From Salpingoeca rosetta (lineage: Eukaryota; Protista; Choanoflagellata): a stretch of DNA of 64,000 nt. The translations under genes were made by a program, and so were the position numbers. Positions 581 through 38,700 of the stretch are shown piece by piece. The first letter of the stretch is position 1, and each line of letters starts with the position of its first letter. The stretch is taken from the NCBI GenBank assembly GCA_033442325.1, contig JAWQFM010000017.1:83775-147774 (forward strand), read 5' to 3'. The notes under the pieces are model-generated. The model did no database searches, was not told where the DNA came from, and saw nothing but the letters and a program-made list of their open reading frames with translations.

Positions 581-731
581 ATGGTACGCCCGTGAACGCT
601 GCTGTTGTGCTTCTGCCATCCTCCCTGCATGCTGCCTTCCACCATCATCATCACCCTTCACCCCCCGCTCCCAACACTCATCATCAAATTCACACCATCC
701 CTCCTTTCCCACACACACACACACACACACT

Positions 732-765
<34 letters not shown>

Positions 766-3700
766 ACACACACACATACATTCACACAACACAACACACA
801 CACACACACAACACGCTCCCACACCGTTTGTCTCTCCCCCACCCACCCACTCACACCCCTCACACCCTCTCCCCGTTCTCCCCACTTCCCCTCTCACAAC
901 AGGCACGCCGCGCTTCCCCCATGGAGCTGCTGCTGCTTCTTCTTCTGACAACCGCCTTGAGCCCAGTCAAGGCCGCCACCACCACCTACGAGACGGTGGA
1001 CATCACGCTGATTTCTGACACTGGAGCGACTGTCGTGTTTGAGCAGACGTTCGAGCTTTTGGACGATGCCAACATCTCCACCGTCGTGCCATCATTTGGA
1101 CAAGTGGGAACCCGCGTCACCGTCTCTGGGCAGCTGCTGCTTGGCGGTGGTACTCGCATCTCCGGCGCCACGCTGGCTGGCGTCCCCGCGCGCCGCATCC
1201 TCTCGTCCAACAACACCTTGGTTGTTGTGGAGGCTGCTGCCAGCGACCCAACGCCCGTCGGAGACATTGTCCTCACCGCAGACACGGGCGCGCTCACCAC
1301 CATCCGTGACGCCTGGACATACCGGCCCCAGGGCAACGTGTCCGCCATCACGCCCAGCAGCGGCCAGCGCGGCACCCACGTCACCATCACGGGCTCCAAC
1401 TTGCTTGGCCACGCCACGCGCCTCGCTACCGTGACGCTCGGGTCCGTGCAAGCGCGCATCCTCGAGGCCGCCAACGAGCGCGTCGTCGTGCGTGCCGCCC
1501 CTGCCCCGGCCGGTAACGTCGACGTCTTGCTCAAGGCAGAGTCTGGCGCGGAGGTGGCTGTTCCCGGTGGGTTCGACTACACACCGCAGGGCGTCATCAC
1601 GGGCGTCCAGCCGTCCTCGGGACAGCTGGGCACCTTCATCACGGTCACCGGCACAAACCTGCTCGGCGCGGCGCCCTCCCTGGCTACCGCCGCCTTTGGC
1701 ACCGCCCAGCCGTCCCAAGCCACCATCCAGTCGGCAACCAACACGCAGGTGGTCCTGCGCGCGGGCGCAGAGCCGGCGGGGCCCGGCCAAGGCCGCACGA
1801 ACCTCACCCTGACGCTGACAGCCTCCACCCACGCCATAATCGACGCCAACGACACCTTCTCCTACGTGGACGCCAGCAGCATCGACACCGTGGCGCCGTC
1901 TTCGGGCCAGGTCGGAACCCGCGTCACCATCACCGGCCAGCGCCTCTACGGCCTCGGCTCCAGCATCGTCAGCGTCACCTTCAACGGCGTTGAGGCCCGC
2001 GACATTGTGGAGGCGTCCCCGACTCGCGTCGTTGCCATTGCCCCGTCCGCGCCGGCCACCACGGGCCTGGCAGACGTCGTCGTCACCGCAGACACGGGCG
2101 CCACCGCCATCGCCTCCGCAACGTGGACGCAGCTCGAGGAGTCGGTCGTCTCCAGCATCAGCCCTTCCTCCGGCCAGCAAGGCACGCGCGTCATTGTGAC
2201 GGGCTTCCGCTTCTTTGGCGGCGGCTCCCGCATCGTCAACGTCACGCTTGCCGGCGTCCCCGCCACCATTGTCATTGCCCTGCCGACGCTGGTCACCCTC
2301 GACGCCGGGTACGGCGCAAACTCCACGGGCGACCTGCTCATGATCGCAGACTCGGGCGCGGAGACGCGCGTCGTCGACGGCTTCACCTACCTCGACCCTG
2401 GCGTCATCGCCGCCGTGCGGCCGGCAACCGGGCGCGTGGGCACCCGCGTCACCATCACGGGCAAGAACCTGCTTGGCGGCGGCACTTTTGTGGAGGCCGT
2501 GTCCCTTGCCGGCTTCCCGGCCGAGCTCGTCTCCGCCACCAACTCGCGCATCGAGGTCGTCACCGCGCGCGGGCTCGAGGGCACCGGCGACGTGGCCATC
2601 AGCACAAGCACCGGCGCCACCATCGTCCGCCCAAACGGCTTCTCCTACCTCTCTGCCGGCCAAGTTGAGACGGTCGTGCCAGACATGGGCCAGCTCGGCA
2701 CCCGCGTCACCCTGGCTGGCCGCAACCTCCTCGGCGGCGGATCCACCCTCGTCTCCGTCAAGCTCGTCGGCGTCGAGGTGCAGGAGATTGTGTCTGCAAA
2801 CAACACGCAGGTGATTGTGGTCGCCGCCGCACCCGCGCCGGGCTCCTTGCCCTCCCCGGCCATTGGCGACGTTGAGTTCGTCGCAGACACGGGCGCGCGC
2901 TTCACGGCCATCGCCGCCTGGCGCTACCGCACACCCGGCGCCATCACAGACATCTTGCCCACGTCGGGCCAGGCTGGCACGTTTGTTCGCCTCACGGGAA
3001 CCTCGCTCCTGGGCGGGGGCACCGCCGCACGCCGCGTCACCTTTGGCGCCAGCGTCACCGCCGATGTCATCGCCCAAAGCAGCACCGCGCTGGTGGTGCG
3101 CATCAACGTGGACGAGGCAACGGCGCTCGTTGCGTCAGACGCCGTTGTCGACGTCACCATCGAGTCAAACACGGGCGCCATCGTCACCCTCCCAGCCAGC
3201 TTCGCCCTGCGCGCCACCGGCCGCATCGACTCTGTCTCCCCAGCCACGGGCCAGGTCGGCACGCGCGTCACCATCGCGGGCTCCCGCCTGCTCGGTGGCG
3301 CAGCGGCGCTCGACCGCGTCGTCCTCGCTGGCACTGACGTGCAGGCCATTGTCTCCGAGTCTGACACGCAGGTGGTGGTCATTGCGGGCGTCAACGTGCC
3401 CAGCTCCGGCGACGTGGAGCTGCTCGCCGAGTCTGGTGCAGTCGTCACCCTCAGCCCCAACGCCTTCACCTACGCGCCCGTCAACGCCGCGCCCGAGGTG
3501 CAGGCGCCGGCCGCCGTCACGCTGGACGAGGACGCCAGCCCCGTGCCCGTGGACGTCACCGTGGCCGACAGCGACGCGGAGGAGTACAACGGCACCATGG
3601 TCACCAACCTGCGCTGCACGGAGGGCACCATCTCCGTTGACGGCGGCCTTCGCCGCAGCAGCCGCATCACCGTGGTCGGCCAGCTCCGCGTCATCAACCA

Positions 3701-6700
3701 CCAGCTCAACGGCCTCACGTACAAGCCCAACCCAAACTTCTTCGGCAACGACACCCTGGTGGTGGATGTTGACGACAGGGGCAACAGCGGCTCCGGCGGC
3801 AACCTCACCGCGTCCGCCAACGTCACCCTGCATGTGCGCTCCGTCAACGACCAGCCCGTCCTCTCCACCACCGCCGTCGCCGTCCTGCCCACCATCAACG
3901 AGGACGTGTCGGAGGACATGAACGAGGGCGCCACCGCCGCCTCCCTCCTCACGGGCCTGGTCACGGACCCCGACGACGCCATGTTCGGCATGGCCATCGT
4001 GCACATTGCCAACTCCTCGGCCGCAGGCACCTGGCAGGTGGTGCCGGCTGCCGCAGGCGCTGCACCCGTCAACCTGACCGCGGCCGCCACCACCCCGGCC
4101 AACGCCACCCTGGTTGGGCCCTACGACCACCTGCGCTTCCTCCCCGCGCCCAACTTCAACGGCCGCGCCACCCTCACCTTCCGCGCCTGGGACCTCACCC
4201 AGCACGCGCCGCTGGCCGTGGTGGACACGACGCAGGCCGCCTCCACCGCGTCCTCGCCGTTCTCCCGCGACACCACGCGCGCCGTCGTCACCGTCGTCTC
4301 CGTCAACGACGTGCCGGAGGTGCTGCTCAACACGCCCTCGGGCAACTACCGCGCCACCTTCCTGGAGCAGTCGTCCACGGGCGCGCTCATCCTCCCGTCC
4401 TCGCTCACCATCACCGACGCCGACCACGCCACGCTCGACAGCGCGCGCGTGGAGATTGTCAACAGGGAGGATGGCGAGGCGGAGTTCCTGGCCGCAAACT
4501 CGGTCGTCACCGCCAACATGGGCCTGTCCCTGCTGGTGGAGGCCAGCAACACCACCTACACCATTGTCATCCGCTCCCGCAGCGCCGCCCGCATGCCCAT
4601 CTCCAACTACGCCACGGTCCTCAAGTCGTTGCGCTATGTCAACGCCGCCGACGAGCCAAACCCGGCCACCCGCTCCATCGCCCTCACCGTGAGCGACGGC
4701 ATCGACGCGTCGCCCGTCGTCCACACCTACGTCGACATGCAGCTCGTCAACGACCACGCGCCCGTCATCACCTACACGCAGACGCAGCCGCTCGTCTTGC
4801 GCGAGCCAAACACCAGCCTTCCGCTGCTCGACACAGACCCGCTCACCGTGACGGACCAGGACCACGCCTCCTTCCTCCTCGTGTCCGCGCAGGCCTCCAT
4901 CACCGCAGACTCCCTGCGCGACCCGGCACACGAGCGCCTGGCCGTGACCACCCCGGCCGGCTTTGGCTTCACCGTCACCTTTGGCAACGGCTCCCTCGCC
5001 GTGTCCGGCCTCGGCACCGCCGAGGAGTACACCGCCATCCTCAACTCGCTCGTGTACGTCAACGCCGCGGAGGAGCCCACCCCGGGCCCGCGCCGCGTCA
5101 GCGTGGTCGTGCGCGATGCGGACTTTGAGAGCGAGCCTGTCGTCATCAGCGTGGACGTGCAGGTGATCAACGACCGCGCGCCGGAGGTTGACCTGAGCGG
5201 GCCCTCGCAGCCCGGCATCGACTCTGCCGTGGACTTTGTGGAGGAGGGCCACCCGGTCCGCATCGCGGCAAGCGACGCCACCGTCACGGATCCGGACAGC
5301 GGCAACTTCACCATGGAGGCTATGTGGGTGCGCATCGACGATGCCCTCGACGGCGACCTCGAGTCCCTCGTGCTGTTGCCGCCGCCGGAGCTCGGCCTGG
5401 GCACCGCCGTCATCAACGCCACCGTCCTCGGCAGCAGCAGCAGCAGCGCGCCCGTGCAGCTTGGCCCGCTCTCCGCCTCCTACGATGCGGGCTCGCACAC
5501 GCTCATGATCGCGGGCTCTGCGTCGCCGGACGTCTACACGGCGGCCCTGCGTGCCGTGGCGTATGCCAACGTGGCGGACCTCCCCAGCGGCGTGAGCGCC
5601 CGCACCATCTCCGTGGTTGTGTGGGACGGCGGCTTCAACTCCACAGTGGCCCGCGCCGCAGTCCACATCATCATGATCAACGACCCGCCCATGCTCAACG
5701 TGGGCGGGCCCGCCGCCGACGACCACAGCAATGTGGTGCACTACCGCGAGGGCGGCGCCCCGCTGGCGCTCGTTGACCCAGATGCCCTGCTCTCCGACGA
5801 GGACCACACCGTGCTGGCCTGGGCGCGGCTCCTCCTGGTCAGCGCCCCAGACTACACGGACGAGGTGCTCGCCGTCGACACCACAGGCACCAGCATTGTG
5901 GCCTCCTTCGAGCACACGGTCAACGAGGACCGCGGCCCGGGCGAGGGCAAGGCAAGCACCACCGCGGAGATTGAGCTTGCCGGCGTTGAGGCGTCCGTGT
6001 GGGCGGCCGATGCCGTCCTCCCATCGCAGTTTGAGAACATCACCGCTGACCTGCTCAACCACGAGCTGGGGCTCCCCGGCGGCAACGAGACGGTGGTCGT
6101 GCGCGTGCTCAACGCCACGGCGTCTGCGCTGGACGTCAACGGGCAGCCGGCCTCCCGGCCCATTGCCCGCATCTCCCTGCAGGTGGTGGCCGACGACCGG
6201 TTCCTCAGTGTCATGTCCAGCAACCTCACGCGCGTCGTGTCCTCCTCGGGCCTGCTGCTGACCTCCCTCAAGCAGCACTCGGGCGCGTACTTCTACGTCA
6301 ACACCATCCCCTTTGTTGTCGAGCCGCAAACGCGCGCGTTTGACGTGGTGGAGTTTTACGCCACCCTCACCCTCACGGGCCCAGATGCGCTCGACAACTT
6401 CCTCAAGGTCCTGCGCACGGCCACGTACCAGAACCTCGAGTCGCGCCCGGGACAGCCCAGCACCCTCACCCGCACCGTCGAGTTTGTGGTCAGCGACGGC
6501 AACCTCACCAGCACGCCCGTGTACTCGTTTGTCACGTTTGCGGCAGTGAACGATGCCCCGCTCGTGGACCTCAACGGGCCCACCGAGGCCGGGAACGACA
6601 ACACCATCACCTTCACGGAGGAGACGGAGCCCGTCCCCATTGCCGCACCAAACGCCACCCTGCGCGATGTCGACAACGCCACGCTCGCCTGGCTCACGGC

Positions 6701-9700
6701 GCGCATTGTCAACAACCTCGACGGCGCTGGCGAGGTGCTCAGCGCGGGCCCAGACGTCCCCAGTGCCGTCCAGGTCTCGTACGCGGCTGGCACCGCAACG
6801 CTCACCTTCACGGGCGTGGCGTCCACCCGCCGCTACCAGGACATCCTGCGCGGCATCACCTTTGTCAACACGCGCGACGAGCCGGACCCGACGCCACGCG
6901 TGGTGGAGGTGATTGCCAGCGACGGCGACCGCGCGTCGCTCTCGCGCTTCACCACCGTCAACATGGCCTTCACCAACGACCCGCCCGTGCTGGCCCTGGG
7001 CACCGCGCAGGCCACCAACTGGACCACCGCGTTTGTTGAGGACGAGCGGCCCGGCTCGCCCATCGCGTCCCCAGACACGCTCATCACGGACGACGATGAC
7101 ACGCACCTCACCTCCGCCCTCATCCGCATCACCAACGTGCAGGACACGCCCGCGTTTGAGGTGCTCACCGTGCCCGCAAGCGTGGTGCCGTCCGGCGGCA
7201 GCGCCACGGGCAACAACACGGACACGCTGCTGCTCTCCTGGCCGGCGACGCTGGCGCAGTGGGCGGCCGCCCTGCAGGAGGTGCGCTACCTCAACCTGGA
7301 CAACGATCCCGAGGTCGACACACCGCGTGTCGTGGCCGTGTCTGTCGTGGACGCCGCAGCCACGGGCGCCGGCGCGCCGCAGCAGCGGTCCAACACGGGC
7401 GTTCACCACCATCGACCTGACTGCCGTCAACGACGCTCCGCAGGTGGGCTTCAACGGGTCCACAGACGCGCCGATGCACACCACGTTTGTGGAGGGCGGG
7501 TCCGCCGTGGCCCTGACCACGGACGCGCTGCGTGTCTTCGACTACGACGACGACTACGTCCAGTCCGCGCTCGTGCGCATCGAGAACCTGATTGACCGCA
7601 CCCTCGCCAACACGTTTGAGGTGCTCTCCGTCAACGCGTCCGCTGCGCCCGCCCTGAGCGTGCAGTACTTCCCGGACGGCTTCCTCTCCATCACGGGCAA
7701 CGCCACGAAGCAAGCGTACCGCGCGCTCCTGCGCACGCTCACGTACGAGAACACGTTCCCCAACCCGTCGACGCAGCCGCGCATCGTGTCGCTCGTCATC
7801 AACGACGGCCGCCTCACCAGCGAGCCCTCGTACGCTGTGGTCGCCATCGACGCGCAGAACAACGCCCCCATGCTCGACCTCAACGGCGTGCTGGCGCCCA
7901 GCGTCAGCTCCTCGGCGCTCTTCATCCAGGGCCTGGGCGACGTCCCCGTCACCAGCAGCCAGTCGTATGTCACAGACTACGAAGGCGACCTGGTGCAGGG
8001 CATGAACGTCACCATCACGCCGCTCCCCGACGCGCCGTCAGAGCAGCTCTTCCTCACCTACACGCCGCCTCCCCCAGGCCACGTCGAGACGCTGTCCACG
8101 TCCACGCTCAACGCAGCCATCGCCTCCTCCTGCGCCACCGCGCCCACGTCGTTCTGCACGTCCGCCGTTCTCACCAGCGGCAGCGCAGGCGCCACCGTCT
8201 CCGACGTGCAGGTGGTGGTGGACATTGACCACCCGTACGTGGGCGAGCTCATCCTCACCCTCTCGCACGCAGGGCGCTCCGTGCAGCTCGTGGCCAACCC
8301 GGCCAGTGCCAGCGGCGCCTCGGGCCAGTGCGCCCTCGCCGACTTTGTCAACCTGCACTTTTCTGATCGCGCCAGCCAGAGCGTGACCACGCGCTGCGCC
8401 TCCGCAGAGGGCTACACGGGCTCTGTGCGGCCCGAGAACGCCCTCAGCGCCTTTGACGGCCTGGACATGGGCGGCGACTGGGTCCTGGAGGTGCAGGACA
8501 CGGTGCGCTTCTTCTCCCACGGCTCCCTGCGCAGGTTTGCCCTCATCCTCACCTCCGGCACACGCACGTACACCACGTGGTCCGCCTCGCAGGCCGTGTC
8601 GCCGTCTGCGCCAAGCTCCATCCCGCTCAGCGTGTCCAGCGCCAGCGCCGTGGTCGACGCAGACGTGCACGTGCACCTGACCTCCGCCTCTGTGGAGGAC
8701 GTGCGCGTGTCGCTCACGTCCGCGGCCGGCGCAGACGCGGGTGCCGCCCCCGTGGTGCTCAAGGACTTTGGCGCCGTCAACGGCCCTTGCTCAACCGCCA
8801 GCACGGGCTCCCTCGTGTTCGACACGCGCGTCGACAGCACGGCCGCCGGCCACGTCGCAGCAGCGGACACCTGCCCCGCATACCCGACCTCCATCCTGCA
8901 GCCCGCAGCGCCAGCGCAGCCCCTGCACGACCTGGTTGACCAGGTGTCGCTCGGCACGTGGTCCGTGCTCGTGGAGACGCGCGCGGGCGTGACGGCGACC
9001 GTGCACTACGTTGAGCTGCGCCTGGCGGAGCGGCCCAACGTTGAGGTTGGCTACGACGCGGCCCAGGGCCTGCTCACCATCCGTGGCGCAGACTCCGCCG
9101 ACGTGTACACGTCCCTCCTGCAGACGCTGCGCTACAACAACCAGCAGGTTCTCCCCACCCCCGTGGAGCGCGTGCTCAGCTTTGTCGTGTCGGACGGCCA
9201 GGACAGCAACGCGGACGCCAACATCACCCTCACCACGCACAACCAGCCCATTCTCGACTTGGACACCGCCTCTGGCGACACGTCGCTGGACACGAGCGTC
9301 GTGTTTGTGGAGGGCGGCGCCGCGAGCCCCATCCTGCTCACGGACCAGTCCAGCCTCTCCACGGACGGCCTCTTCCAGATCCAGTCGGCACACGTGCGCC
9401 TGGACAACCCGCTCGACGGCGGAAACGAGACGCTCTCCTGGACCCCGACCAACGCCAGCACTGCCGCGGGCATCACGGCGGTAGCTCTCGATGCGGAGGC
9501 GCACGAGCTGCTGCTCACGGGCCTGGCGGGCCCAGGGGACTACCTCACGGCGCTGACAAACGTGCACTACCACAACAGCGACCGCAACCCGCACGCGGAC
9601 CCGCGCGTCATCACCACCACCGTCACGGACACCGCCACCCTCACCAGCATTCCCCGCACCACCACCGTTTTTGTGCACCCGGTCAACGACCCTCCGGAGC

Positions 9701-27700: not shown

Positions 27701-30700
27701 GATGGTGCATCAGACAGCAACACGGTTTCGCGAATCATTGAGGTCAACCTCATCAACGACCAGACGCCCGTGGTTGATCTGAGCGGCGACGCTGCTGCGG
27801 GCATCGACTACGACAACGTCACCTTTGTGGAAGAGGGCGCGGACGTCAGCGTGGTGGATGCGCAGCGCCTGACGGTGCGCGACGATGACTCTGGACCTTT
27901 CCTCATGCAGTGGGCCAGCGCCACCATTGTCAACGGCCAGGACGGCAGCGCAGAGCAGCTGTACGTCACGGCAACGTCGCCCAACATCACGTCCGTGGTG
28001 TACACGCCAGCAAACTACACGCTGGAGCTGCGCGGTGCGGCGGAGGCGAGCGAGTACGAGCGTGTGCTGCGCACGCTCATGTACGGCAACAGCGCGGACG
28101 AGCCGCAGCCGCCGACAGAGCGCAACATCAGCGTTGTGGTCGCAGACGACAGCCACGTGAGCGCGGCGGCGGTGAGCAGGGTGCGCATTGAGCTGACCAA
28201 CGACGCACGCTGGCCTTTCGACCTAAGAACCTCTCTTGCTTCAGCCCCTTAACACTTAGATGCCTGGTTTGATTAACCAGGTGCAACTATGCGGTATGAG
28301 TTATCGTGTATAGCTCACAGCTGCTATATACTCCTGGTGGCCACCGACTCTTTCCGAGGTGTATGTTACACTAGATGGCACCCCAGTCTGGTAATGCGGC
28401 AGGATCCCCTGTAGCTGAGACGTGGCTTCTGTGATCACGCGACCTCAGGTATTCGGTTAGACTAACGGGGTCAAAAGACGTGACGTCAGGGTCCCCTATA
28501 CGATCTTTAGGGAATCAGGGCACTGCCGGATCCCACGACGCCGGTCGGACACCACTGCGCGGATGTTTGTTGCATCAACTTTTCCACAGTAGTCTGATTT
28601 GGGTAGTAACTCCGAACCATAGGAATGACAAGGTATCCAGTACAAGAGACATCGCAGCTGGACGCGGGCTCGTGAGCGCATCGCATATTGATGGAGCGCG
28701 TGGCACAATAGCAGAATGGTTCGTCCCGGGCGGCGGCGTGTCGCTGCAGTCGACGGCGTTTGTGTCGTTTATGGGCGTGAACGATGCGCCGATCCTCGAC
28801 CTTGACGCGTCGTCGCCCGGCAGCGGGTACAAGGCGGTGTTTGTTGAGGAGCAGGGCGCGGTGGCTGCTGTGTCGCCAACGGACCTTGTGCTGATTGACG
28901 TGGACAACGCGACGGTGTCTGGGGCGTGGGCGCGGCTGTGGAGCGCGGAGAGTGCGAGCAACGCCGACGCGCAGGAGCTTGTGACCGACACGAGCGGGAC
29001 GGGCCTGTCGTGGTCGTACGACAGCGCTTCCCGGGTGCTGAGCGTGAGTGGTGTTGGGACGACGGCTGAGTATGCGACGGTGCTGTCGCGCGTGCAGTAC
29101 AACAACATGGAGGATGAGCCGCACCCAGCGAACCGCACGGTGACGTTTACGGTGTCTGATGGGCTTGCGACCAGCACGCCCGTGAACAGCACCATCCGCA
29201 TCCTCCTCACCAATGACCCGCCGCGCCTGTACCTGAATGGCAGCGCCATCGTCCCCGATACCAGCATCGTGTATGACGAGGGCGAGGGCCTGCGGCAACT
29301 CTTTGACAATGTGCTCGTGCAAGAGGATGACGTTGGCGACCTCATCACTCAGGCTGTGCTTGAGATCACCAACCCGCAGAACGGCAATCTGGAGAGCATG
29401 GCGCTCCTCTCGTTTGTGGGCGCATCCGTTCAGCTTGGCCCGGCCTCGCTGACCCTGACCAAGCCCGACGGCGTCGCGGCGTGGATTCAGATTCTGGAAA
29501 CGGTCGCATACACCAACGACGCCAAGGCCCCGCGCGGCGAGGTGCAGCGCGTCATCACCGTGCGCATCAAGGACCTTGCAGGCGCGTGGTCAAACACGGC
29601 GTCCTGCTTTGTCACCATCATCGAGCGCAACGACTCTCCTGTGCTGACCAGCACCGCATTTGCGCTGGCGGACGAATTCGAGGATGAGACAGACACCACC
29701 GCAACACCTCTGGCCGCGCTGATTGGCCCATCCATCACAGATGCTGACGCAGATACCCTCGCTGGTATTGCTGTCACGGGCTTTGACACAGATGGCGGCC
29801 GCTGGCAGCTGTTGGTGAACAACACGCTGTGGGTGGACATCCCCGTTGTGTCGCCAGCATCCGCACTGCTGCTGCCACTGGACGACGCTGTCATTCGCTT
29901 CGTGCCCTTGCCAGACTTCAATGGCGTGCAAACGCTCTCCTTCCGCGCATGGGACCAGACAGAGGGCGAGGCTTACAACTACACGGACACGACGGCCGCA
30001 GCAGCATCGGCATTTAACGCCTTTAGCGCCTCTGTCGGCACGCTGTCCATCAACGTGCTCCCACTTAACGACCGCCCACTCCTCAACGCCACCCGCGTTG
30101 CCGCCTTCCCAGACATCAACGAGGACGTTCCTGTTGCCGACAACACTGGTGCGTCGCTGGCTTCGCTCGTCGTGGGCGCTATCGACGACATTGACGCGGG
30201 TGCTGTGCCTGGCGTGGCTGTTGTGGAAGCAGACGTCAGCAACGGTGCTTGGCAGTTCTCCCTGGACGGGGGCTCATCCTGGACAACCGCAAACGTGAGC
30301 AGCGCGCAGTACCTGCTTCTGGACGCCTCCAGTGCACAGACGCGCCTGCGCTTCCTGCCAAACCTGCAGTTCCACGGCACCACGTCCCTCACCGTGCAGG
30401 CCTGGGATCAGACCGACGGCGAGGCAAGCGGCTCCTACGTCAACTCGACACGTGCCGATGCGCCAACGTCACCGTTCAGCCTGGCCCACGCCCGCCTCTT
30501 GCTCACCGTCCTGCCTGTGAATGACCAACCCGTGCTCAACGCCACGGCAGCCACGGCAGTGAGCCTCACCCCGATCATGGAGGATGTCCCGTCAGCCGCC
30601 AACACCGGCGACGCTGTGTCATCGCTGCTCGAGCGCGTGGTGGTGGACTTTGATGCGGACGCCGTTCTGGGCGCCGTCGTGACCGCTGTCGATGACACCA

Positions 30701-33700
30701 ACGGTATCTGGGAGTACCGGGGCATGTATGCCAGCGCGTGGCGCGCCATGACGCCGCCCAGCGGCAGCGGTCTGCCGCTCCTGCTCAAGGGCACTGCGCG
30801 CGTGCGCTTCCGCCCCGGCCTCAACTTCCATGGCAATGCCACGTTCACCTTCCACGCGTGGGACCAGAGCAGCAACTCCACAAACGTCACGTCCGCGCTT
30901 GGCGACATGACGGCGGCCATCAGTGACGCCAGCGCCATGGCAGCAATCACCGTGCTGCCCGTCAACGACGCGCCAACCTTCACCGGCGTGCCGCTGCGCC
31001 TCAACAGCATCTTCGAGGACGTGCCTGCACGCAACAACTTGGGCACGACCATCGCTGACATTGTCGACGCCGGCGTGATGGACGTGGACGAGGATACGGA
31101 GCTTGGCCTCGCGGTCGTCGACTCGAGGGTGGAAGGCGGCTCATGGGAGTACCAGGTGGTTCCTGGTGGCAACTGGTCCACCTTCTTCGGCACCATCCTC
31201 ATCAACGGTGCGCGCTACCCCGAGTATGCGACGGAGCGCCGTGCAACGCTGCTTGGCCCCGACGCCCGCATCCGCTTCCTGCCCGATCGCAACTTCAACG
31301 GCGTGGCCACGCTTGTTGCCAAGGCCTGGGACATGACCGCTGGGTACTCTGGACAGTTCAACGTCGACACGCGAAACGCAGTGCCCACAGGTGCGTTCAG
31401 CCTGAACACGACGCAGGTCAGCATCGACGTCGAGTCCGTCAATGACATCACACAGTTGCAGCTCAACGCAACGGGCAACGCCACAAACGCCTTTGTCACG
31501 TTTGTCGAAGGCTCTGACGGAACCCTGGTGACGGAGGGTGTCACCCTCACGGATGAGGACGACACGCACCTGGCCTGGGTCGAGCTGCTCCTGGCTGACA
31601 TTGAAGACGGCACAGACGAGACGCTCACCGTGCACATGGTGAACAGCACGGCCAACGTCACGCTGACAGCGGTGCGCATGGGCATCAACAACGACATGCT
31701 GCGCCTGACCCTGAGCGGCAGCGGCCTGTCCCTTGACATGGCTGCGTTGCTCCTGGAGAGCACGACGTACAGCAACGCGGCGCTGGAGCCTGTCGTGGGC
31801 GAGCGTGTTCTCACCGTCTCCGTGAGCGACGGCCTCAACCCGGTCTCCGCACAGACGCGCATCAATGTCGTTCCCATCAACGACAACGCGCCCCTCATCT
31901 CCAACGTGACCACGGACCTCGTTTATGACGAGAACTCTGGGTTCGTGCACGTTTCCCCCTGGCTGCAGCTCTCGGATGACGACCACAACGACCTCTTCTT
32001 CATGGATAAGGCGCTGCTGGAGCTGGAAGACCCACGCACAACCGAAGTGCTGCGTGTCGATGCGCAGAGTGCAGCTGCATCCCTGCCTGGACTGCAGGCG
32101 TCATTCGCCAACGGCGTCCTCACCCTCAACGGCCCTCTCTCCGTCAACGACATGCAGGCGGTGCTGCGAGAGGTGGAGTATGCGGACGAGGCGGAGGAGC
32201 CCGATCCGGACGCACGCCGTATCCATCTCACAGTCCTGGACGATGACTTCATCTCAAACGAGGTGGTGTTTGAGCTCGAGATGGCTCTCATCAACGACCA
32301 GACGCCCGTGGTTGATCTGAGCGGCGACGCTGCTGCGGGCATCGACTACGACAACGTCACCTTTGTGGAAGAGGGCGCGGACGTCAGCGTGGTGGATGCG
32401 CAGCGCCTGACGGTGCGCGACGATGACTCTGGACCTTTCCTCATGCAGTGGGCCAGCGCCACCATTGTCAACGGCCAGGACGGCAGCGCAGAGCAGCTGT
32501 ACGTCACGGCAACGTCGCCCAACATCACGTCCGTGGTGTACACGCCAGCAAACTACACGCTGGAGCTGCGCGGTGCGGCGGAGGCGAGCGAGTACGAGCG
32601 TGTGCTGCGCACGCTCATGTACGGCAACAGCGCGGACGAGCCGCAGCCGCCGACAGAGCGCAACATCAGCGTTGTGGTCGCAGACGACAGCCACGTGAGC
32701 GCGGCGGCGGTGAGCAGGGTGCGCATTGAGCTGACCAACGACGCGCCCGTGATTGACCTGAGCGGGCCCAGTGTGCCTGGGCGCGACGTTGTTGCGCAGT
32801 ACCGCGAGGGCCAGGGCGCGCTGTCGCTCGTGGACAGCAGCGCCGCGCGCATCTCGGACGACGATGACACGGAGCTGGCGTACGTGAGCGTGTCGATTGT
32901 GCCTCGCCCGGACGCGGAGGCTGAGGTGCTTGCGTTTGACGCTGGCGTCCTGAGCGGGGCCGGCAGCGGCATCACGGTGAACGCGACGAGCGCAGGCGTG
33001 GTGCTGCGTGGCCCCGCAAGCGTGGGCGCGTTTGAGGCCGTGCTGCGGACGCTGACGTACGAGAACACAATGGCCAAGCCCGGGCGGCCGAGCACGGCGC
33101 TGCGGCACGTGGAGGTTGTTGCCGAGGACGTGCGCGGCGGCGTGTCGCTGCAGTCGACGGCGTTTGTGTCGTTTATGGGCGTGAACGATGCGCCGATCCT
33201 CGACCTTGACGCGTCGTCGCCCGGCAGCGGGTACGAGGCGGTGTTTGTTGAGGAGCAGGGCGCGGTGGCTGCTGTGTCGCCAACGGACCTTGTGCTGATT
33301 GACGTGGACAACGCGACGGTGTCTGGGGCGTGGGCGCGGCTGTGGAGCGCGGAGAGTGCGAGCAACGCCGACGCGCAGGAGCTTGTGACCGACACGAGCG
33401 GGACGGGCCTGTCGTGGTCGTACGACAGCGCTTCCCGGGTGCTGAGCGTGAGTGGTGTTGGGACGACGGCTGAGTATGCGACGGTGCTGTCGCGCGTGCA
33501 GTACAACAACATGGAGGATGAGCCGCACCCAGCGAACCGCACGGTGACGTTTACGGTGTCTGACGGGCTTGCGACCAGCACGCCCGTGAACAGCACCATC
33601 CGCATCCTCCTCACCAACGACCCGCCGCGCCTTGCCGCCTCGAGCAACCTTCGCAACGTGTTTGAGGACGCGGCGTTGGCCGTGTTCCCCGACCTGGTTT

Positions 33701-36700
33701 TGGAGGATGACGACAGCGACTCGCTCTCCTCTGCTGTGTTCCGCATCCTCAACCCCGTCGATGGCGTTCTGGAGCGAGTGTACCTGCCTGCTGATGTTGC
33801 TGTGCCTTCTGGCCTTGAGCTGCGGGACAACGACACCAACAGCATGAGTGTTGTCGGTACCGCGCCTCTGTCAACGTGGCAGGACGTCCTCTCGTCCGTC
33901 CACTACCGCTCGCTCTCACAGCAGCCATACCCGGCTATTCGCGAGGTGACACTGCAGGCGCGTGACGACATGAACGCCACCAGCAACACGGTGCGCGCGA
34001 ACATTGGTGTGTCGACGCAAAATGACGCGCCGCGCCACCGCTCCAGCTACCCGTACGACGAAACAGTGTCTGTGCTTGAGGATGGCGTGCTCGTTCTGCC
34101 CTCGCTGCGGTACTTCCACGATCCGGACGACGTGCTGCAGCCGAGCGGCGTCGTCGTGACGCCTTCACCCCATCACGGTACAGCCCAGGTGAACATGACC
34201 AACGGTGATGTTGTGTACACGCCCGACGCCAACTACTTTGGCAGCGACTCGTTTGGCTTCCTCGTGTGCGACAGCAAGCAGGCGTGCTCCCCAGCCACCA
34301 TTGACGTGGCTGTGCAGCCTGTGAACGACCGACCAACGGCCGAGAACCTGACGGTGACCGGCCCCGAGGACACGCTGTTTGTGATTGATCTCCTTTCGCT
34401 GGTGGACGACGTGGAGGATGCTGCCGAGCTCTGGCGCGGCCTGAGCATTGTGAGCGAGCCCGGCCGCGGGCGCCTCGTTGGCTGGCTTGCAGGCGACGGC
34501 ACCAGCACCACCACATCCACCGCTGCATCGACGCTGTCTTCAACGACGATGGATGGCTCTGGGATGGACGCCACCATGCCCCCGATGTCCGGTGACGGTG
34601 GTTCTGGCGATACAACCACCACCGCCACTACCACTACCACGAGCACGAGCACGACAGCAACGACGACGACGACCATGACCACGTCCTCTTCGTCGTGGTC
34701 ACTGGACATGGGCTCTGGTGACACTTCTTCTTCTTCTTCTTCAACAACGACAACGGCCACGACAACAACCACAGGATCTGGTATGTCACCACCAGTGTTC
34801 AGCACGACAACTACCACGACAACCACTGCACCGGGCAGCACAACGGCCTTTGCTGGATCCGTGACGCCCGCACCCCCGACAGAACCCACGCTGCCGGACA
34901 CCCTATTTGAGCCGACACTTGGGCTTGTGGGGTACATTCCCGATGCGCACTACCACGGGGAGGACGCGTTCCGCTTTGAGGTGTGCGATCCAGAGGGCCT
35001 GTGCTCGCAGGCTGTGATCTCACTGGTGATTGAGAGCGTCAACGACGTGCCTGTCGCCGTGAGCATTGCGCTGACCACCGAGGAGGACATGGCCGTTGCT
35101 GTGGACGTTGGCCCGTACGTCGCTGATGTGGAGGATGCCGACACGTCCCTGGCGCTGACGGTGACGCAACCAACCAGCGGCACGGGCATTGCTGCCGGCA
35201 ACACCATCACATACCAGCCAAACGCGCAGTTCACGGGCCAGGACGCCTTCACGTACACGGTGTGCGACCGCGACGGCGCGTGCGCAACGGCAAATGTGAG
35301 CGTGTTCGTGCACGCCATCAACGACCGCCCGCGCGCCGCCAACATCACTGGCGAGCTGCTTGAGGATTCATCGCTGACCCTGAACCTCGTAGACCTCGTG
35401 TTTGACGTGGAGGACCAGCTCGACGGCATGGACGTCACCATCACCGAGGACGTGCAGAGCGGCGCGCTCACGTACGACGCCAACTCGGGCATTGCGCTGT
35501 ATGTGCCCGATGAGAACTTCAACGGCTGGGATGGCTTCACGTACCGCGTGTGCGACACGCAGGGGCTGTGCAGGGTTGGCCGCGTGGACCTGACGGTGTG
35601 GGCGATGAACGACGTGCCCGTGACCTCCACGGCGACGCTGACGGTGCGCGAGGACGAGGCACACGCGCTGGCGCTGCGCCCGTACGTGTCCGATGTGGAG
35701 GACAACGCGGCGGACCTGCAGTTCACCGTGGCCGTTGCCCCACTCCACGGCACGGCCAGCATCGACGCCAGCACGGCCGTGCTCACGTACACGCCTGCCA
35801 GCGACTACTCTGGCCTGGACACGGTGCGCTACCGTGTGTGTGACACGGAGGGCGCGTGCGCGCGCGGCGAGGTCGACATCACGGTGACTGAGGTCAACGA
35901 CGCACCGGTGGCGTCGGATGTGGCGACCACCACGCCGGAGGACACGCCACTGCTGCTCCTCGCAAGGGACTACGTGGTGGACGTGGACGACGACGTTGCG
36001 GACCTGTCCGTGACCGTGGGCGCGCCAACGACGGAGCATGGCACGCTGCGCGTGGACACACGCACGGGTATCATCTCCTACACCCCGGACGACAACTTCC
36101 ACGGCACAGACGCGTTCAACTTCACCGTGTGCGACCTTGCTGGCCTGTGCGACACTGCCAGTGTCAGCGTGGAGGTGCTGAGCGTCAACGACGCACCCAC
36201 CGTGGCCGATGTGCAGGAGAACGTGCTTGCAGGCACGGCCATTGTGCTTGACGTTGTGTCGCTTGCGGAGGACGTGGACGAGGAGCCGCCGTCCGACCCG
36301 AACCACGTGCTCAACCCGCTCTCCGTGCGCGTCACGCGCCAGCCGGAGAACAACCTGGCCTTTGTGGAGGTGGTGGACGGGCGTGCCGTGGTGACATACG
36401 TTGCGCAAGAGACCACGTCCACGTACGGCTTCTTCGGCACGGAGACGTTTGAGTTCGAGGTGTGCGACAAGTTCCAGGAGTGCGCGCGCGGCACGGCGAC
36501 CATCACAGTTGACTTTGAGGGCCCCGCCGTGGCCTCGGTTGTCGCATCTGACCCGGACGACGGCGACTTCACCTTCTCCACCGGAGACGAGATTGTGGTC
36601 ACGTTCAGCGAGGCCACCAACATGCCGTTTGGCACCTCGCTTGACGAGGAGGACGTGGCGCAGCTCCTTGAGCTACCGACCGCCCTCGCCTTCTCCGGCC

Positions 36701-38700
36701 GCTTCACGGGCGCATGGGCAAGCCCGACGGAGCTCGTGCTCACCGTGGCGCAGTGCCTCACGTGCCGTGGCGAGGAGACGGGCTTGCAGTTTGACACAAC
36801 ACCGCCGGCCGTGAGCCTCATCTTCATGGACCAGTTTGCTGGCGAGCGCATTCGCGTGCGCGCCGAGGGCGGCCTGCGCAACGCCGCAGAGACGTCGCTG
36901 CCGTCCACGGCGGTGGCACCGCGCTTCACGGGCGACTGGGGCCGTGCTCAGCCGCAGGTCACCACGATTGAGGTGAGCTCGCCAACGGACGTGAGCCCGT
37001 CCGAGGCCGGCTTTGCGCTGCCAACGGGCACGCAGCTGGTGCTGTCGTTCAACGGCCCTGTGAACCGCCTCGCGTGCACGGAGCTGACGGCCGAGGACTT
37101 TGACCTGGTGTTCCTGCAGCAGGTGCTGAGCCGCGGCGACGACGACGCGCTCACGGCTGACCTCGGGTCCGTTGTTGGCCGCTGGGTGGTGGCTGGCAGC
37201 GACGAGTGCCCGCTGACGGAGGACGAGGCGATGCAGCTGGGTGCAAACGGCGGTGCTGTGACTGCACGACGCCGCCGCGCAGCCAACGTGCCCACGTACG
37301 CAGACTCACTCATGCTGTACGTGGTTGACGCCAGCACACAGACGCTGCCGTCTGTGTCTGACCTGACGCTCTTCCTGAGTGTGGATGACACGTCGCTCGG
37401 CACGGAGTTCAACAACTACCTGCAGTCGTCCTCGCAGACCACGCGCAAGGTGATTGACGTCATGGACCCGAACTTCGACCCCGTGACGGATGCGTCCACA
37501 ACCAACGAGGGCGTGTATGTCGTGACATTTGTGGCCGCCGACCCCGACAACCGCGACTCGGAGTTCTCCGTGGGCGACACGCTCACGCTGACGTTCAACA
37601 CGGCCGTGGTGAGCAGGGACGTGAGCACGAAGCGCGCCATTGACGAGGCACTCGTGTTTGAGCAGGAGGGTGTGGCCGTGGACATTGCGGATTACGAGGG
37701 CGAGTTCACGGCGCCAGATACGCTGGTGATCACCGTCCTCAACGCGACGAGCAACATTGTGCCTGCTGTTGGCGGGATGCGCGTGCGCATGCTGCCGGAG
37801 ACGTTCGTCGCCGCAAACGACGAGAGCGTGGTGAACGTGCAGTCCGGCCGGCTGCTGGAGGGCGACTTTGGCAGCCCGCGCGAGACCAGCGCCATGTACT
37901 ACGTGGCGCCCGTGCTGCTGTTTGTGATTGCGGGCCTGTTTGCGCTGTTTGCCCTCTTCAAGCAGAAGCGCGCGGAGGACAAGCGCAAGATGTCCGCAGC
38001 CGTTCTCACGAGCGGACAGGAGCAGACGTGGATGCAGCCGCCACCAGCGGTCACCATGCGCAAGACACAGGACCCCTTCACCAACTTTGACACGCTCGGT
38101 GCCAGCCAGCACGGCAGCGCAGCAGCAGCGGCGGCCTCGTCCACAAAGCCACAAGAGAAGCGCGTGTCTGTGCCGCGGCTGTCGTTTGACGCCAACGCGC
38201 ACCGCTCGCTGCCTCAACCGCCGTCGCAGCAGCAGTTCTCGCCGCGCCGCCGCCCATCACTCATCGCTCGCTCGGGATCAACATCCTCCCAGCAGCAGCA
38301 GCAGCAACAGCAGCAGTCAAACCCGCTGTCTCCAGTTGCTGTTCCGCCCCTGCGCCGGGACAGTGCAGGCGAGGGCGCCGTGCCCCGCCGCTCCAACATG
38401 CCCAAGGGCTCACTGCCACCACTTCGCACGCAAGACCCCTTCCGTGCTGCCAGCGGGGCGCCGCATTTCCTGCCGCCACTGGCCAAGCGGCCTGGCGCAG
38501 GCACCACGCGCCCGCCAAGCCTGTCCCGCCCGCCGCCACCAGCAGCTGGTCGGCTGGCGTCGCTCTCACGTGCACCGGGACAGGGCGGGGCCAAGCGGCC
38601 GTCACTCGCTGCACCGCCACGCCCGTCGCTGCCGAGCCTGAGGCGCGGGCCACCAACCATGAGGCCGCCGCCAGGCACACGGGGCGACAGCAAGCAGTAA
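581..38700 (+). CDS. Giant (~12,500 aa) type-I transmembrane adhesin-like surface protein (IPT/TIG, cadherin-like/Ig-like repeats, P-domains, tandem-95/Big_9-like repeats, mucin segment, TM, Pro-rich tail), broken into 5 ORFs in this assembly
   Basis: ORFs 828-7595, 6913-13356, 13521-17795, 17747-28252 and 28480-38700 carry the same repeat families and continue across the breaks. There is only one signal peptide (MELLLLLLLTTALSPVKA, ATG 921) and only one TM helix (37894-37959). A possible micro-exon ATG 581-583 is joined by a GT..AG intron (584-902) in frame. Confidence 0.8.
584..902 (+). other. Putative spliceosomal intron after a lone ATG codon
   Basis: ATG|GTACGC ... (CA)n-rich ... ACAACAG|GCA. 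Splicing gives M-ARRASP-MELLLL in frame. Confidence 0.55.
921..7399 (+). CDS. Giant adhesin segment 1: signal peptide, IPT/TIG x9, first super-repeat
   Basis: ORF 828-7595. The repeat consensus is lost after ...QQRSNT, where GGG at 7397-7399 shifts the frame. Confidence 0.85.
1070..3480 (+). repeat. Nine tandem IPT/TIG-like domains (~85-95 aa)
   Basis: Repeated I..V.P.SGQ.GTRVTI.G..LLGG ... GDV...ADTGA...F.Y motif. Confidence 0.85.
7400..13338 (+). CDS. Giant adhesin segment 2: cadherin-like modules plus first P-domain pair
   Basis: ORF 6913-13356 matches the repeat consensus from AFTTIDLTAVNDAP to TRVVRV. Confidence 0.85.
8190..9030 (+). other. Tandem proprotein-convertase P-domain pair (copy 1)
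   Basis: VSDVQVVVDIDHPYVGELILTLSH ... LSAFDG...GDWVLEVQD...GSLRRFALIL matches the recalled P_proprotein signature. Confidence 0.75.
12889..13192 (+). repeat. Near-identical internal duplication A1 (copy at 17472-17775)
   Basis: Direct comparison: offset 4583, only about 4 substitutions seen. Confidence 0.95.
13339..13495. other. Compositionally foreign, non-coding ~157-bp segment inside the giant gene
   Basis: Abrupt loss of codon bias, lower GC, TA dinucleotides and stop codons; no host-type microsatellite. Confidence 0.8.
13496..17775 (+). CDS. Giant adhesin segment 3
   Basis: ORF 13521-17795. It extends upstream as TYV(g)EHGGPVRLL with one extra G at ~13505. Confidence 0.85.
13864..14369 (+). 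repeat. Near-identical internal duplication B1 (copy at 17772-18277)
   Basis: Direct comparison: offset 3908, very few substitutions. Confidence 0.95.
17472..18277 (+). repeat. Second copy of A+B, fused at a GCGT microhomology
   Basis: Matches 12889-13192, then jumps to 13864-14369. Confidence 0.95.
17772..28206 (+). CDS. Giant adhesin segment 4: includes second P-domain pair and Cys-rich minidomain
   Basis: ORF 17747-28252 follows the consensus from VDFDVAVINDRRP to ELTNDA. Confidence 0.85.
25215..26065 (+). other. Tandem proprotein-convertase P-domain pair (copy 2)
   Basis: LQHDMLGDVRAYLEHDG...GDWTLQVVD...GQLLDWSL and VTDVDVAV...LAHPDGT...GEWSLTV...LHGWALSL. Confidence 0.75.
27749..29228 (+). 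repeat. Near-identical duplication C1/D1 (copy at 32287-33632), interrupted by foreign segment 28207-28729
   Basis: 27749-28206 matches 32287-32744 (offset 4538); 28730-29228 matches 33134-33632 (offset 4404). Confidence 0.95.
28207..28729. other. Compositionally foreign, non-coding 523-bp segment replacing one repeat module
   Basis: Borders defined to the base by the duplicate at 32287-33632; random-looking sequence of roughly balanced composition. Confidence 0.85.
28730..38700 (+). CDS. Giant adhesin segment 5: last super-repeats, Big_9-like repeats, mucin, RRRR site, TM, cytoplasmic tail
   Basis: ORF 28480-38700 follows the consensus from GGVSLQSTAFVSF; stop TAA at 38698-38700. Confidence 0.85.
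32287..33632 (+). repeat. Intact second copy of the C-D duplication
   Basis: Open frame; contains the 389-bp module (32745-33133) that is missing from copy 1. Confidence 0.95.
34020..36520 (+). repeat. Seven tandem-95/Big_9-like repeats, each with a VCD-x4-C cysteine pair
   Basis: Repeated YTP..N(F/Y).G.D.F.(Y/F).VCD..G.C....V...V..VND.P.A motif. Confidence 0.8.

What the first reader, a model, noticed from the sequence alone, without database searches (positions are those of the whole stretch)
581..38700. Five separate ORFs are probably one ~12,500-aa membrane-anchored mega-adhesin
Seen: one signal peptide at the far 5' end, one TM helix plus tail at the far 3' end, and an unbroken register of repeat modules across four breaks. 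Each break has a local explanation (extra G, deletion, foreign filler). Inference: a single >1 MDa type-I surface protein of roughly 80 beta-sandwich domains with abundant N-x-S/T sequons and DxD/NDxP Ca2+-binding-like motifs, long enough to project hundreds of nm from the cell. It is a candidate for substrate adhesion, prey capture, collar/glycocalyx or colony matrix. Automatic annotation would fragment it into hypothetical proteins.
Basis: partly seen in the sequence, partly recalled or inferred. Interest (0 to 1): 0.9.

Follow-up and report, generated by a model that had tools for sequence, protein, structure and literature searches.

The report
One giant cadherin-like surface protein gene
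The five open reading frames are pieces of one roughly 12,700-residue membrane-anchored cadherin-like protein gene; at least two of the four breaks are errors of this assembly, not of the organism.

Summary
Five same-strand ORFs (828-38700) carry one signal peptide, nine IPT/TIG domains, about 62 cadherin-like modules of ~147 aa, P-domains, seven tandem-95 repeats, one TM helix and a tail.

- **Intact orthologue.** A 41-kb Tara Oceans scaffold carries an orthologue (60-64% aa identity) colinear with all five ORFs. It has no stop over 11,429 + 1,377 codons and is interrupted only by a 100-N scaffold gap.
- **Breaks 2 and 3.** Contigs of three independent sequencing studies contradict both. The 165-nt filler at 13340-13504 is replaced by 115 other letters, which restores the frame. 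The deletion junction at 17773 has no coverage. A 1,431-nt repeat contig at double depth is traversed twice, which adds 625 nt and again restores the frame.
- **Break 4.** It has the same signature: a unique filler of near-uniform base composition between near-identical repeat flanks. Not read-tested.
- **Break 1.** It is one extra G in a GGG run. Not read-tested.
- **Selection.** dN/dS is 0.28-0.35 in all five pieces.
- **Expression and function.** Both are untested.

This is a new variant of the cadherin superfamily, fragmented here mainly by assembly error.

The parts
921..974 (+). Likely start codon and signal peptide (MELLLLLLLTTALSPVKA)
   Evidence: the orthologue starts at the equivalent signal peptide.
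990..3470 (+). Nine IPT/TIG domains
   Evidence: PF01833 scores 173 bits against a cut-off of 20.9. Nine G-Q-x-G-T-x-V-x-I-x-G motifs at ~88-aa spacing.
3474..7397 (+). First array of cadherin-like ~147-aa modules (rest of ORF 1)
   Evidence: Module HMM hits; colinear with orthologue aa 80-2226 at 63% identity.
7397..7399 (+). Break 1: one surplus G in a GGG run, shifting frame 0 to frame 1
   Evidence: No residue is missing relative to the orthologue. Two relatives read through this site. Not tested with reads.
7399..13339 (+). ORF 2 piece: cadherin-like modules with a proprotein-convertase P-domain region (8185-8886)
   Evidence: colinear with orthologue aa 2222-4189.
12889..14369 (+). Repeat R, copy 1. 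In reads it is a 1,431-nt contig at about twice the depth of its neighbours
13340..13504 (+). Break 2: 165-nt filler found in this assembly only. Read contigs carry 115 other letters here, which puts ORF 2 and ORF 3 in frame
   Evidence: joint 13339/13505 with '115 letters between' in runs X1, X3 and X9. Base composition near uniform. Unique in the assembly.
13505..17771 (+). ORF 3 piece: cadherin-like modules, including the Trp-rich subtype
   Evidence: colinear with orthologue aa 4220-5649 at 64% identity.
17472..18296 (+). Repeat R, copy 2, truncated in this assembly. Break 3 is the deletion junction at 17772-17775
   Evidence: Window 17502-18247 has zero coverage in three runs. The flanking contigs end exactly 30 nt into R. 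A full R adds 625 nt (208 aa); the orthologue has 209 aa more here.
17774..28206 (+). ORF 4 piece: cadherin-like modules, second P-domain region (25130-25991), Cys-rich insert (27209-27376)
   Evidence: Colinear with orthologue aa 5859-9357. A 9,531-nt read contig is colinear with 18248-27778.
28207..28729 (+). Break 4: 523-nt filler with stops in all frames, replacing about 130 aa (one module)
   Evidence: Unique in the assembly. No match in plasmids, E. coli or GTDB genomes. The orthologue has 131 aa here. Not tested with reads.
27749..29228 (+). Repeat B, copy 1. Its flanks are 100% and 99.4% identical to copy 2 at 32287-33632
   Evidence: The read contig ends at 27778, which is 30 nt into B, so B is also a repeat in reads.
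28730..34038 (+). ORF 5, first part: cadherin-like modules, including the intact B copy 2 (32287-33632)
   Evidence: colinear with orthologue aa 9489-11402 at 64% identity.
34039..36516 (+). Seven tandem-95 / Big_9 / Cadherin_5 repeats, with a Ser/Thr-rich mucin-like insert (about 34432-34940)
   Evidence: PF17963 238 bits and PF17892 162 bits. NF012211 177 bits against a cut-off of 90. CxxxxxC pairs and S/T fraction.
36517..37896 (+). Membrane-proximal region with a conserved R-x-R-R|A site (37267-37287)
   Evidence: Alignment of three homologues. The fold prediction was poor, pLDDT 55.
37897..37959 (+). Single transmembrane helix
   Evidence: conserved in the orthologue.
37960..38700 (+). 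Cytoplasmic tail: KQKRAEDKRK, two conserved DPF motifs (38068, 38431), poly-Q, Pro-rich end, stop codon

Best explanation
Window 921-38700 is one essentially intronless gene. In the real genome it encodes a single type-I membrane protein of about 12,700 residues (38,217 nt after the corrections below).

From N- to C-terminus the protein has:
- a signal peptide;
- nine IPT/TIG domains;
- about 62 divergent cadherin-type beta-sandwich modules of ~147 aa, joined by invariant N-D-x-P linkers with acidic Ca-site-like positions;
- two P-domain regions;
- a mucin-like stretch;
- seven tandem-95 repeats;
- a membrane-proximal region with a conserved convertase-type RxRR site;
- one TM helix;
- a tail with two conserved DPF motifs.

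The five-ORF appearance comes mainly from errors of this assembly at two recently homogenised 1.3-1.4-kb internal repeats. Breaks 2 and 3 are shown to be such errors. Break 4 is inferred to be one by analogy. Break 1 is a one-base homopolymer error or a very recent mutation; this is also inferred.

Inferred mechanism: a long, Ca2+-stiffened rod projects the TIG head hundreds of nm from the cell for adhesion or capture. It is possibly cleaved at the RxRR site and coupled to endocytic adaptors through DPF.
For: **Orthologue.** Tara scaffold_662, rebuilt from L003, L007, L008 and L009 with no conflicts, has no stop over 11,429 codons from its ATG. A 100-N gap follows, then 1,377 more codons to the stop, giving 12,806 aa. 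It is colinear with all five window ORFs at 60-64% identity.

**Other relatives.** P0257 is a single 4,530-aa ORF that spans break 1. L006 carries two adjacent gene calls, 5,286 + 4,426 aa, separated by one frame change at a run of nine Gs. Each call reads through one break site: break 3 in the first, break 4 in the second.

**Reads.** In three studies (2018, 2022, 2025), a 1,431-nt contig at about twice the neighbouring depth equals 12889-13339, plus 115 other letters, plus 13505-14369. Position 13505 is then a third codon position in both frames, so ORF 2 and ORF 3 join. The unique contigs end and start exactly 30 nt inside this repeat on both sides of both copies. Window 17502-18247 has no coverage. 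A full second copy adds 625 nt (1 mod 3), which joins ORF 3 and ORF 4. The 208 aa this adds match the 209 aa that the orthologue has in excess here.

**Module profile.** The profile positions missing at the three larger breaks fit 38, 208 and 130 aa.

**Selection.** dN/dS is 0.28-0.35 in every piece, and the 12,361 codons contain no in-frame stop.

**Fold.** AF2 gives pLDDT 88 for a module pair. The best Foldseek hits are protocadherin-15, CDH23, protocadherins and desmogleins. The module profile hits the PCDH15 linker at E 2e-4. phmmer hits include 5,000-aa proteins bearing PF00028.
Against: - Either could be real in the strain.
- The 115 replacement letters were not shown, so the absence of a stop within them is inferred.
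- No RNA evidence was obtained. One raw RNA run placed 0 of 16.5 million reads on 12800-18400, and the tool itself calls this no test.
- The single 147-aa module tested on its own matched nothing in Pfam or NCBIfam, and PF00028 did not appear in any scan of the pieces.
- Function, Ca2+ binding, cleavage and adaptor binding are all inferred.
Confidence: 0.8

Rival explanations
1. The locus is a recently decayed pseudogene. On this view the frameshift, the deletion and the two fillers are real lesions in the organism's DNA.
For: The assembly shows four lesions, and each one breaks the frame. One RNA run gave no reads on 12800-18400.
Against: Contigs from three independent studies lack lesions 2 and 3 and carry in-frame sequence instead. 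There is no in-frame stop in 12,361 codons, and dN/dS is uniform at about 0.3. Unchecked first-reader notes list similar lesions in otherwise intact genes across this assembly.
Confidence: 0.1
2. The fillers at breaks 2 and 4 are spliceosomal introns, so the mRNA is continuous even though the DNA is as assembled.
For: The fillers have lower G+C than the exons. A GTGAGC at 28172 and a CAG ending at 28749 would splice in frame (my reading).
Against: The break-2 filler is absent from the DNA contigs of three studies, so it is not an intron of the organism. No GT-AG pair with a good acceptor restores the frame at break 2 (my reading). The orthologue has coding sequence at both sites. Neither filler's base composition resembles the probable 5' intron or the flanks.
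Confidence: 0.05
3. The locus holds five, or several, independent genes for secreted repeat proteins.
For: The mechanical ORF list shows five long ORFs.
Against: Only the first ORF has a signal peptide and only the last has a TM helix. ORFs 2-5 begin in mid-module. The orthologue is one ORF.
Confidence: 0.03

Closest known systems
Large metazoan cadherins (FAT/Dachsous, CDH23, protocadherin-15)
   Same: Both have long tandem arrays of cadherin-type beta-sandwiches joined by acidic N-D-x-P-type linkers, and both are type-I membrane proteins. Structural and profile matches are. phmmer matches ORF 4 to proteins of about 5,000 aa that bear PF00028. A conserved RxRR site recalls the furin processing of FAT1; that comparison is from my own knowledge.
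   Different: The modules are ~147 aa with two inserted helices, and PF00028 did not appear in any scan. There are no EGF or laminin-G domains. The head is nine IPT/TIG domains. P-domains and tandem-95 repeats are interspersed. The protein is 2.5 to 3.5 times longer. The tail has DPF motifs, and no catenin-binding sequence was seen.
Choanoflagellate cadherins such as MBCDH1/2 of Monosiga brevicollis (Abedin and King 2008; cited from memory, not read here)
   Same: Both are pre-metazoan cadherin-superfamily surface proteins with unusual domain partners. The known ones were reported on the feeding collar.
   Different: Those proteins are far shorter and match the canonical cadherin model. Membership of this gene in their published lists was not checked.
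Bacterial giant repeat adhesins (tandem-95 / Big_9 / VCBS proteins; LapA- or SiiE-like)
   Same: The seven C-terminal repeats pass the NF012211 cut-off and are 35-43% identical to bacterial proteins. The overall logic is the same: a very long Ca-site-rich rod of beta-sandwiches.
   Different: This protein has a eukaryotic signal peptide, a TM anchor and a cytoplasmic tail, not a type-1 secretion signal or an outer-membrane anchor. Most modules here belong to a different, cadherin-like class.

Membership tests
Cadherin superfamily | Tandem repeats that fold as cadherin-type seven-strand beta-sandwiches | tested here: met
   AF2 model of a module pair has pLDDT 88.4. The Foldseek top hits are PCDH15, CDH23, protocadherins, desmogleins and classical cadherins at E about 1e-7.
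Cadherin superfamily | Conserved acidic inter-repeat motifs (XEX, DXD, DRE-like, DxNDxP) | tested here: met
   N2, D3, P5, E25, D42, D44, D60/E64, D132 and N151-D152-P154 are invariant or nearly so in 31 module pairs. Ca2+ binding itself cannot be tested here.
Cadherin superfamily | Match to Pfam Cadherin PF00028 above its gathering score | tested here: not met
   PF00028 does not appear in any scan. Only Cadherin_4, Cadherin_5, Big_9 and weak CLSTN_C appear. The single 147-aa module tested matched nothing.
Cadherin superfamily | Detectable sequence homology to bona fide cadherins | tested here: met
   phmmer hits to PF00028-bearing proteins at E 1e-135 to 1e-100. The module profile hits PCDH15 at E 2.4e-4.
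FAT-type atypical cadherin | EGF and laminin-G domains between the cadherin array and the TM helix | tested here: not met
   No EGF or LamG hit in Pfam scans of any piece.
IPT/TIG domain proteins | PF01833 above its gathering score | tested here: met
   173 bits against 20.9, in seven stretches. Nine motif copies.
Tandem-95 repeat proteins (NF012211) | Repeats above the curated cut-off | tested here: met
   177 bits against a cut-off of 90 for 35248-36201. This applies only to the seven C-terminal repeats.
Pseudogene | Frame-breaking lesions present in the organism's DNA | tested here: not met
   Lesions 2 and 3 are absent from the contigs of three studies. Lesions 1 and 4 were not tested.
Pseudogene | Relaxed selection and accumulated stop codons | tested here: not met
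   No stop in 12,361 codons. dN/dS is 0.28-0.35 in all five pieces.

The most novel reading that the evidence does not exclude
A single-exon gene of about 38 kb encodes a membrane-anchored cadherin-superfamily protein of about 12,700 residues. It would be among the largest proteins of any relative of animals, and it is conserved end to end in at least one uncultured marine relative. On this reading it is the long-range adhesive or capture element of the cell surface (collar links, prey capture or substrate attachment), with a convertase-cleaved ectodomain and a DPF tail that couples bound material to endocytosis.
Probability: 0.25. Interest if true: 0.7.

Novelty: new variant of a known kind. 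Interest (0 to 1): 0.45.

Why it matters
If it is expressed, this is a pre-metazoan-type cadherin-superfamily protein of more than 1.3 MDa with an unreported architecture: a TIG head, 147-aa cadherin-like modules, P-domains, tandem-95 repeats and a DPF tail. That bears on how cadherin-based adhesion was used before animal tissues existed. It is also a concrete candidate for knockout and tagging.

There are two practical lessons:
- This assembly misbuilds near-identical internal repeats and carries filler that the reads do not support. Apparent pseudogenes in this assembly therefore need a check against reads.
- Prokaryotic gene callers called only short antisense ORFs on the metagenomic orthologue upstream of its last 1,300 codons. 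Most of it is therefore missing from protein databases.

Tried and rejected
- **Database proteins from the organism's own runs.** I looked for Logan- or NCBI-derived proteins of the window's organism to recover the true sequence at the breaks. The profile of A-right plus B2 and the ORF 4 and ORF 5 queries returned no protein of this organism. The representative search was swamped by bacterial tandem-95 proteins and gave only two useful relatives.
- **Origin of the fillers.** They have no match in plasmids, E. coli genomes or GTDB genomes. They have no second copy in the assembly. Filler 4 is no more similar to the B middle segment than shuffled sequence is.
- **Composition scan.** A scan for stretches of near-uniform composition was not specific outside the gene.
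- **Introns.** Splicing as a rescue of break 2 was rejected on frame arithmetic and then on the reads.
- **RNA evidence.** Raw run X21 laid 0 reads, which is no test.
- **Membrane-proximal fold.** pLDDT was 55, so the model was not used.
- **Literature.** The searches found no description of this protein and no paper naming GCA_014466315.1.
- **P0255.** It exceeds the size limit of the look-up of encoding contigs.
Full report
**Setting.** The window is contig C17:83775-147774 of a 55.4-Mb, 68-contig eukaryotic assembly. Its 100-N scaffold gaps all lie outside the region of interest. The tools code the organism as 'organism A'. The genome size and gene content suggest to me a Salpingoeca-like choanoflagellate, but no tool showed that.

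**The observation.** Five long + strand ORFs cover 828-38700, in frames 0, 1, 0, 2 and 1.
- The first ORF holds the only signal-peptide-like start, at ATG 921.
- The last ORF holds the only TM helix (37897-37959) and a 246-aa Pro/Gln-rich tail.
- Pfam finds IPT/TIG at the N-terminus and proprotein-convertase P-domains in ORFs 2 and 4. It finds Big_9 / Cadherin_5 / Cadherin_4 near the C-terminus, and only weak cadherin-like hits elsewhere.
- A profile built from the gene's own repeats finds about 62 modules of ~147 aa. ORFs 2-5 begin in mid-module.

**What the breaks are in this assembly.**
- Break 1 is a one-base shift in GGG 7397-7399.
- Break 2 is a 165-nt stretch at 13340-13504.
- Break 3 is a junction at 17772-17775.
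- Break 4 is a 523-nt stretch at 28207-28729.

Self-comparison shows that breaks 2, 3 and 4 all lie inside two pairs of near-identical direct repeats:
- Repeat A: 12889-13192 matches 17472-17775, and 13864-14388 matches 17772-18296, at 98.5% identity.
- Repeat B: 27749-28206 matches 32287-32744 at 100%, and 28730-29228 matches 33134-33632 at 99.4%.

Both fillers are unique in the assembly. Their base composition is close to 25% for each base, with near-maximal trinucleotide entropy, unlike the flanks, the probable 5' intron or the coding sequence. They have stops in all frames. They match nothing in the plasmid, E. coli or GTDB collections.

**An intact orthologue.**
- A search with the C-terminal 1,150 aa gave two useful relatives among thousands of bacterial tandem-95 proteins.
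- One of them, P0126, lies on Tara Oceans scaffold_662 (41,079 nt).
- On this scaffold the gene caller called only short antisense ORFs upstream of P0126. I therefore walked the scaffold with three exact look-ups and rebuilt it without conflicts.
- From an ATG in front of a signal peptide, it runs 11,429 codons without a stop. A 100-N gap inside the Ser/Thr-rich stretch follows, then 1,377 more codons to the stop, giving 12,806 aa.
- It is colinear with all five window ORFs at 60-64% identity.
- At break 1 no residue is missing. At break 2 about 30 aa stand where the filler is. At break 3 the orthologue has 209 aa more. At break 4 it has 131 aa more.
- A second relative, P0257, is a single 4,530-aa ORF at 31-34% identity and reads through break 1.
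- A third, L006 from GCA_014466315.1, carries two adjacent gene calls (5,286 + 4,426 aa) separated by one frame change at a run of nine Gs. Each call reads through one break site: break 3 in the first, break 4 in the second.

**Reads.** Nineteen runs from six studies hold about 0.92 of the sampled words of 12800-18400. I laid the contigs of three studies (2018, 2022, 2025) and one raw RNA run on that stretch. All three contig sets agree.
- A 1,431-nt contig at about twice the neighbouring depth covers 12889-13339, then 115 letters that are not in the window, then 13505-14369. The 165-nt filler is therefore not in the reads.
- With 115 letters in its place, 13505 is a third codon position both in the continued frame of ORF 2 and in the frame of ORF 3, so the two join.
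- The neighbouring contigs are ...-12918, 14340-17501 and 18248-27778. Each overlaps the repeat contig by exactly 30 nt, as expected for k = 31. The assembly graph is therefore unique - R - unique - R - unique.
- Window 17502-18247, which holds the deletion junction, has no coverage. If the junction existed, R would branch at 13192 and 13864, and it does not.
- A complete second R adds 625 nt (1 mod 3), which joins ORF 3 to ORF 4. Its 208 aa match the orthologue's 209-aa excess and the module profile's missing positions.
- After the correction, the left and right offsets of the two R copies agree at 4,533 nt.
- The 9,531-nt contig is colinear with the window as far as 27115. It ends 30 nt into repeat B, so B is also a true repeat in reads.

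I conclude that breaks 2 and 3 are misassemblies of a 1.43-kb repeat in this reference.

- Break 4 has the same signature as break 2. If B copy 1 carries the 389-nt middle of copy 2, the frame is restored, the added 130 aa match the orthologue's 131, and one module is completed.
- Removing one G at break 1 gives exactly the orthologue's length.
- Unchecked first-reader notes list many similar frameshifts and inserts in otherwise intact genes of this assembly.
- With all four corrections the CDS from ATG 921 is 38,217 nt, or 12,739 codons.

**Is it a working gene?** The 12,361 codons of the pieces hold no stop. dN/dS against the orthologue is 0.28-0.35 in each piece. No RNA evidence was obtained: the raw RNA run laid no reads, and the tool calls that no test.

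**What the protein is.**
- An alignment of 31 two-module pairs from the window and the orthologue has invariant N-D-x-P linkers, E25, D42-x-D44, D60/E64 and D132.
- AF2 folds the pair as two beta-sandwiches, each with two short helices, at pLDDT 88.
- Foldseek's best matches are almost all cadherin ectodomains.
- The profile hits the protocadherin-15 linker.
- phmmer links ORF 4 to proteins of about 5,000 aa that bear PF00028.
- PF00028 itself did not appear in any scan, and the single 147-aa module tested on its own matched nothing in Pfam or NCBIfam.
- The seven C-terminal repeats pass the tandem-95 model.
- The membrane-proximal region carries an R-x-R-R|A site that is invariant in three homologues at 34-69% identity.
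- The tail has two DPF motifs and a juxtamembrane KQKRAEDKRK stretch, all conserved in the orthologue.

**Inferred mechanism.** None of this is shown. A Ca2+-stiffened rod hundreds of nm long presents a TIG head. The ectodomain may be cleaved at the RxRR site. The tail may be coupled to AP-2-type adaptors through DPF.

**Verdict.** The fragmentation is largely an assembly artefact. The protein is a new architectural variant of the cadherin superfamily. Its function is untested.

Noticed in passing
window 13340-13504 and 28207-28729: Both fillers have close to 25% of each base and near-maximal trinucleotide entropy. This is unlike any flank, intron or coding stretch nearby. They look like non-biological sequence carried only by this assembly, and their origin is unexplained.
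   Followed up: partly
window 12889-14388 / 17472-18296 and 27749-29228 / 32287-33632: Two tracts of 1.3-1.4 kb are 98.5-100% identical to a paralogous tract 4.4-4.5 kb downstream, which is ten modules away. In the Tara orthologue the corresponding modules are only ordinary paralogues. This points to recent gene conversion within the gene.
   Followed up: partly
window 37267-37287: An R-x-R-R|A site about 200 aa before the TM helix is invariant in three homologues. It is a candidate convertase cleavage site. The protein itself also carries convertase-type P-domains.
   Followed up: partly
window 38068-38088 and 38431-38451: Two DPF motifs in the cytoplasmic tail are conserved in the orthologue. 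They resemble AP-2 appendage-binding motifs; that comparison is from my own knowledge.
   Followed up: no
window 34039-36516: The seven tandem-95 repeats are 35-43% identical to repeats of bacterial giant adhesins. That is closer than most of the protein is to anything eukaryotic in the databases. Either shared ancestry or transfer of the module is possible.
   Followed up: no
L003, L007, L008, L009 (Tara scaffold_662): Upstream of the last 1,300 codons, the metagenome gene caller called dozens of short antisense ORFs on this G+C-rich eukaryotic gene instead of the sense ORF. Most of the orthologue is therefore missing from protein databases.
   Followed up: yes
L006:9880-9900: The distant homologue in GCA_014466315.1 is split into two gene calls at a run of nine Gs. 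This is probably a homopolymer sequencing error.
   Followed up: partly
window 581-902: ATG 581 is followed by GTACGC, and a CA-rich stretch ends in CAG at 902. This would add a one-codon first exon in frame with ATG 921. The orthologue offers no support for it.
   Followed up: partly
window 27209-27376: A 56-aa insert with six cysteines (CECTGQ...FFAYCS) sits inside an almost cysteine-free protein. It has no Pfam match.
   Followed up: partly
window 12800-18400: Raw RNA run X21 (library selection 'RT-PCR') placed none of 16.5 million reads here. Whether the organism's RNA is in that run at all was not checked.
   Followed up: no
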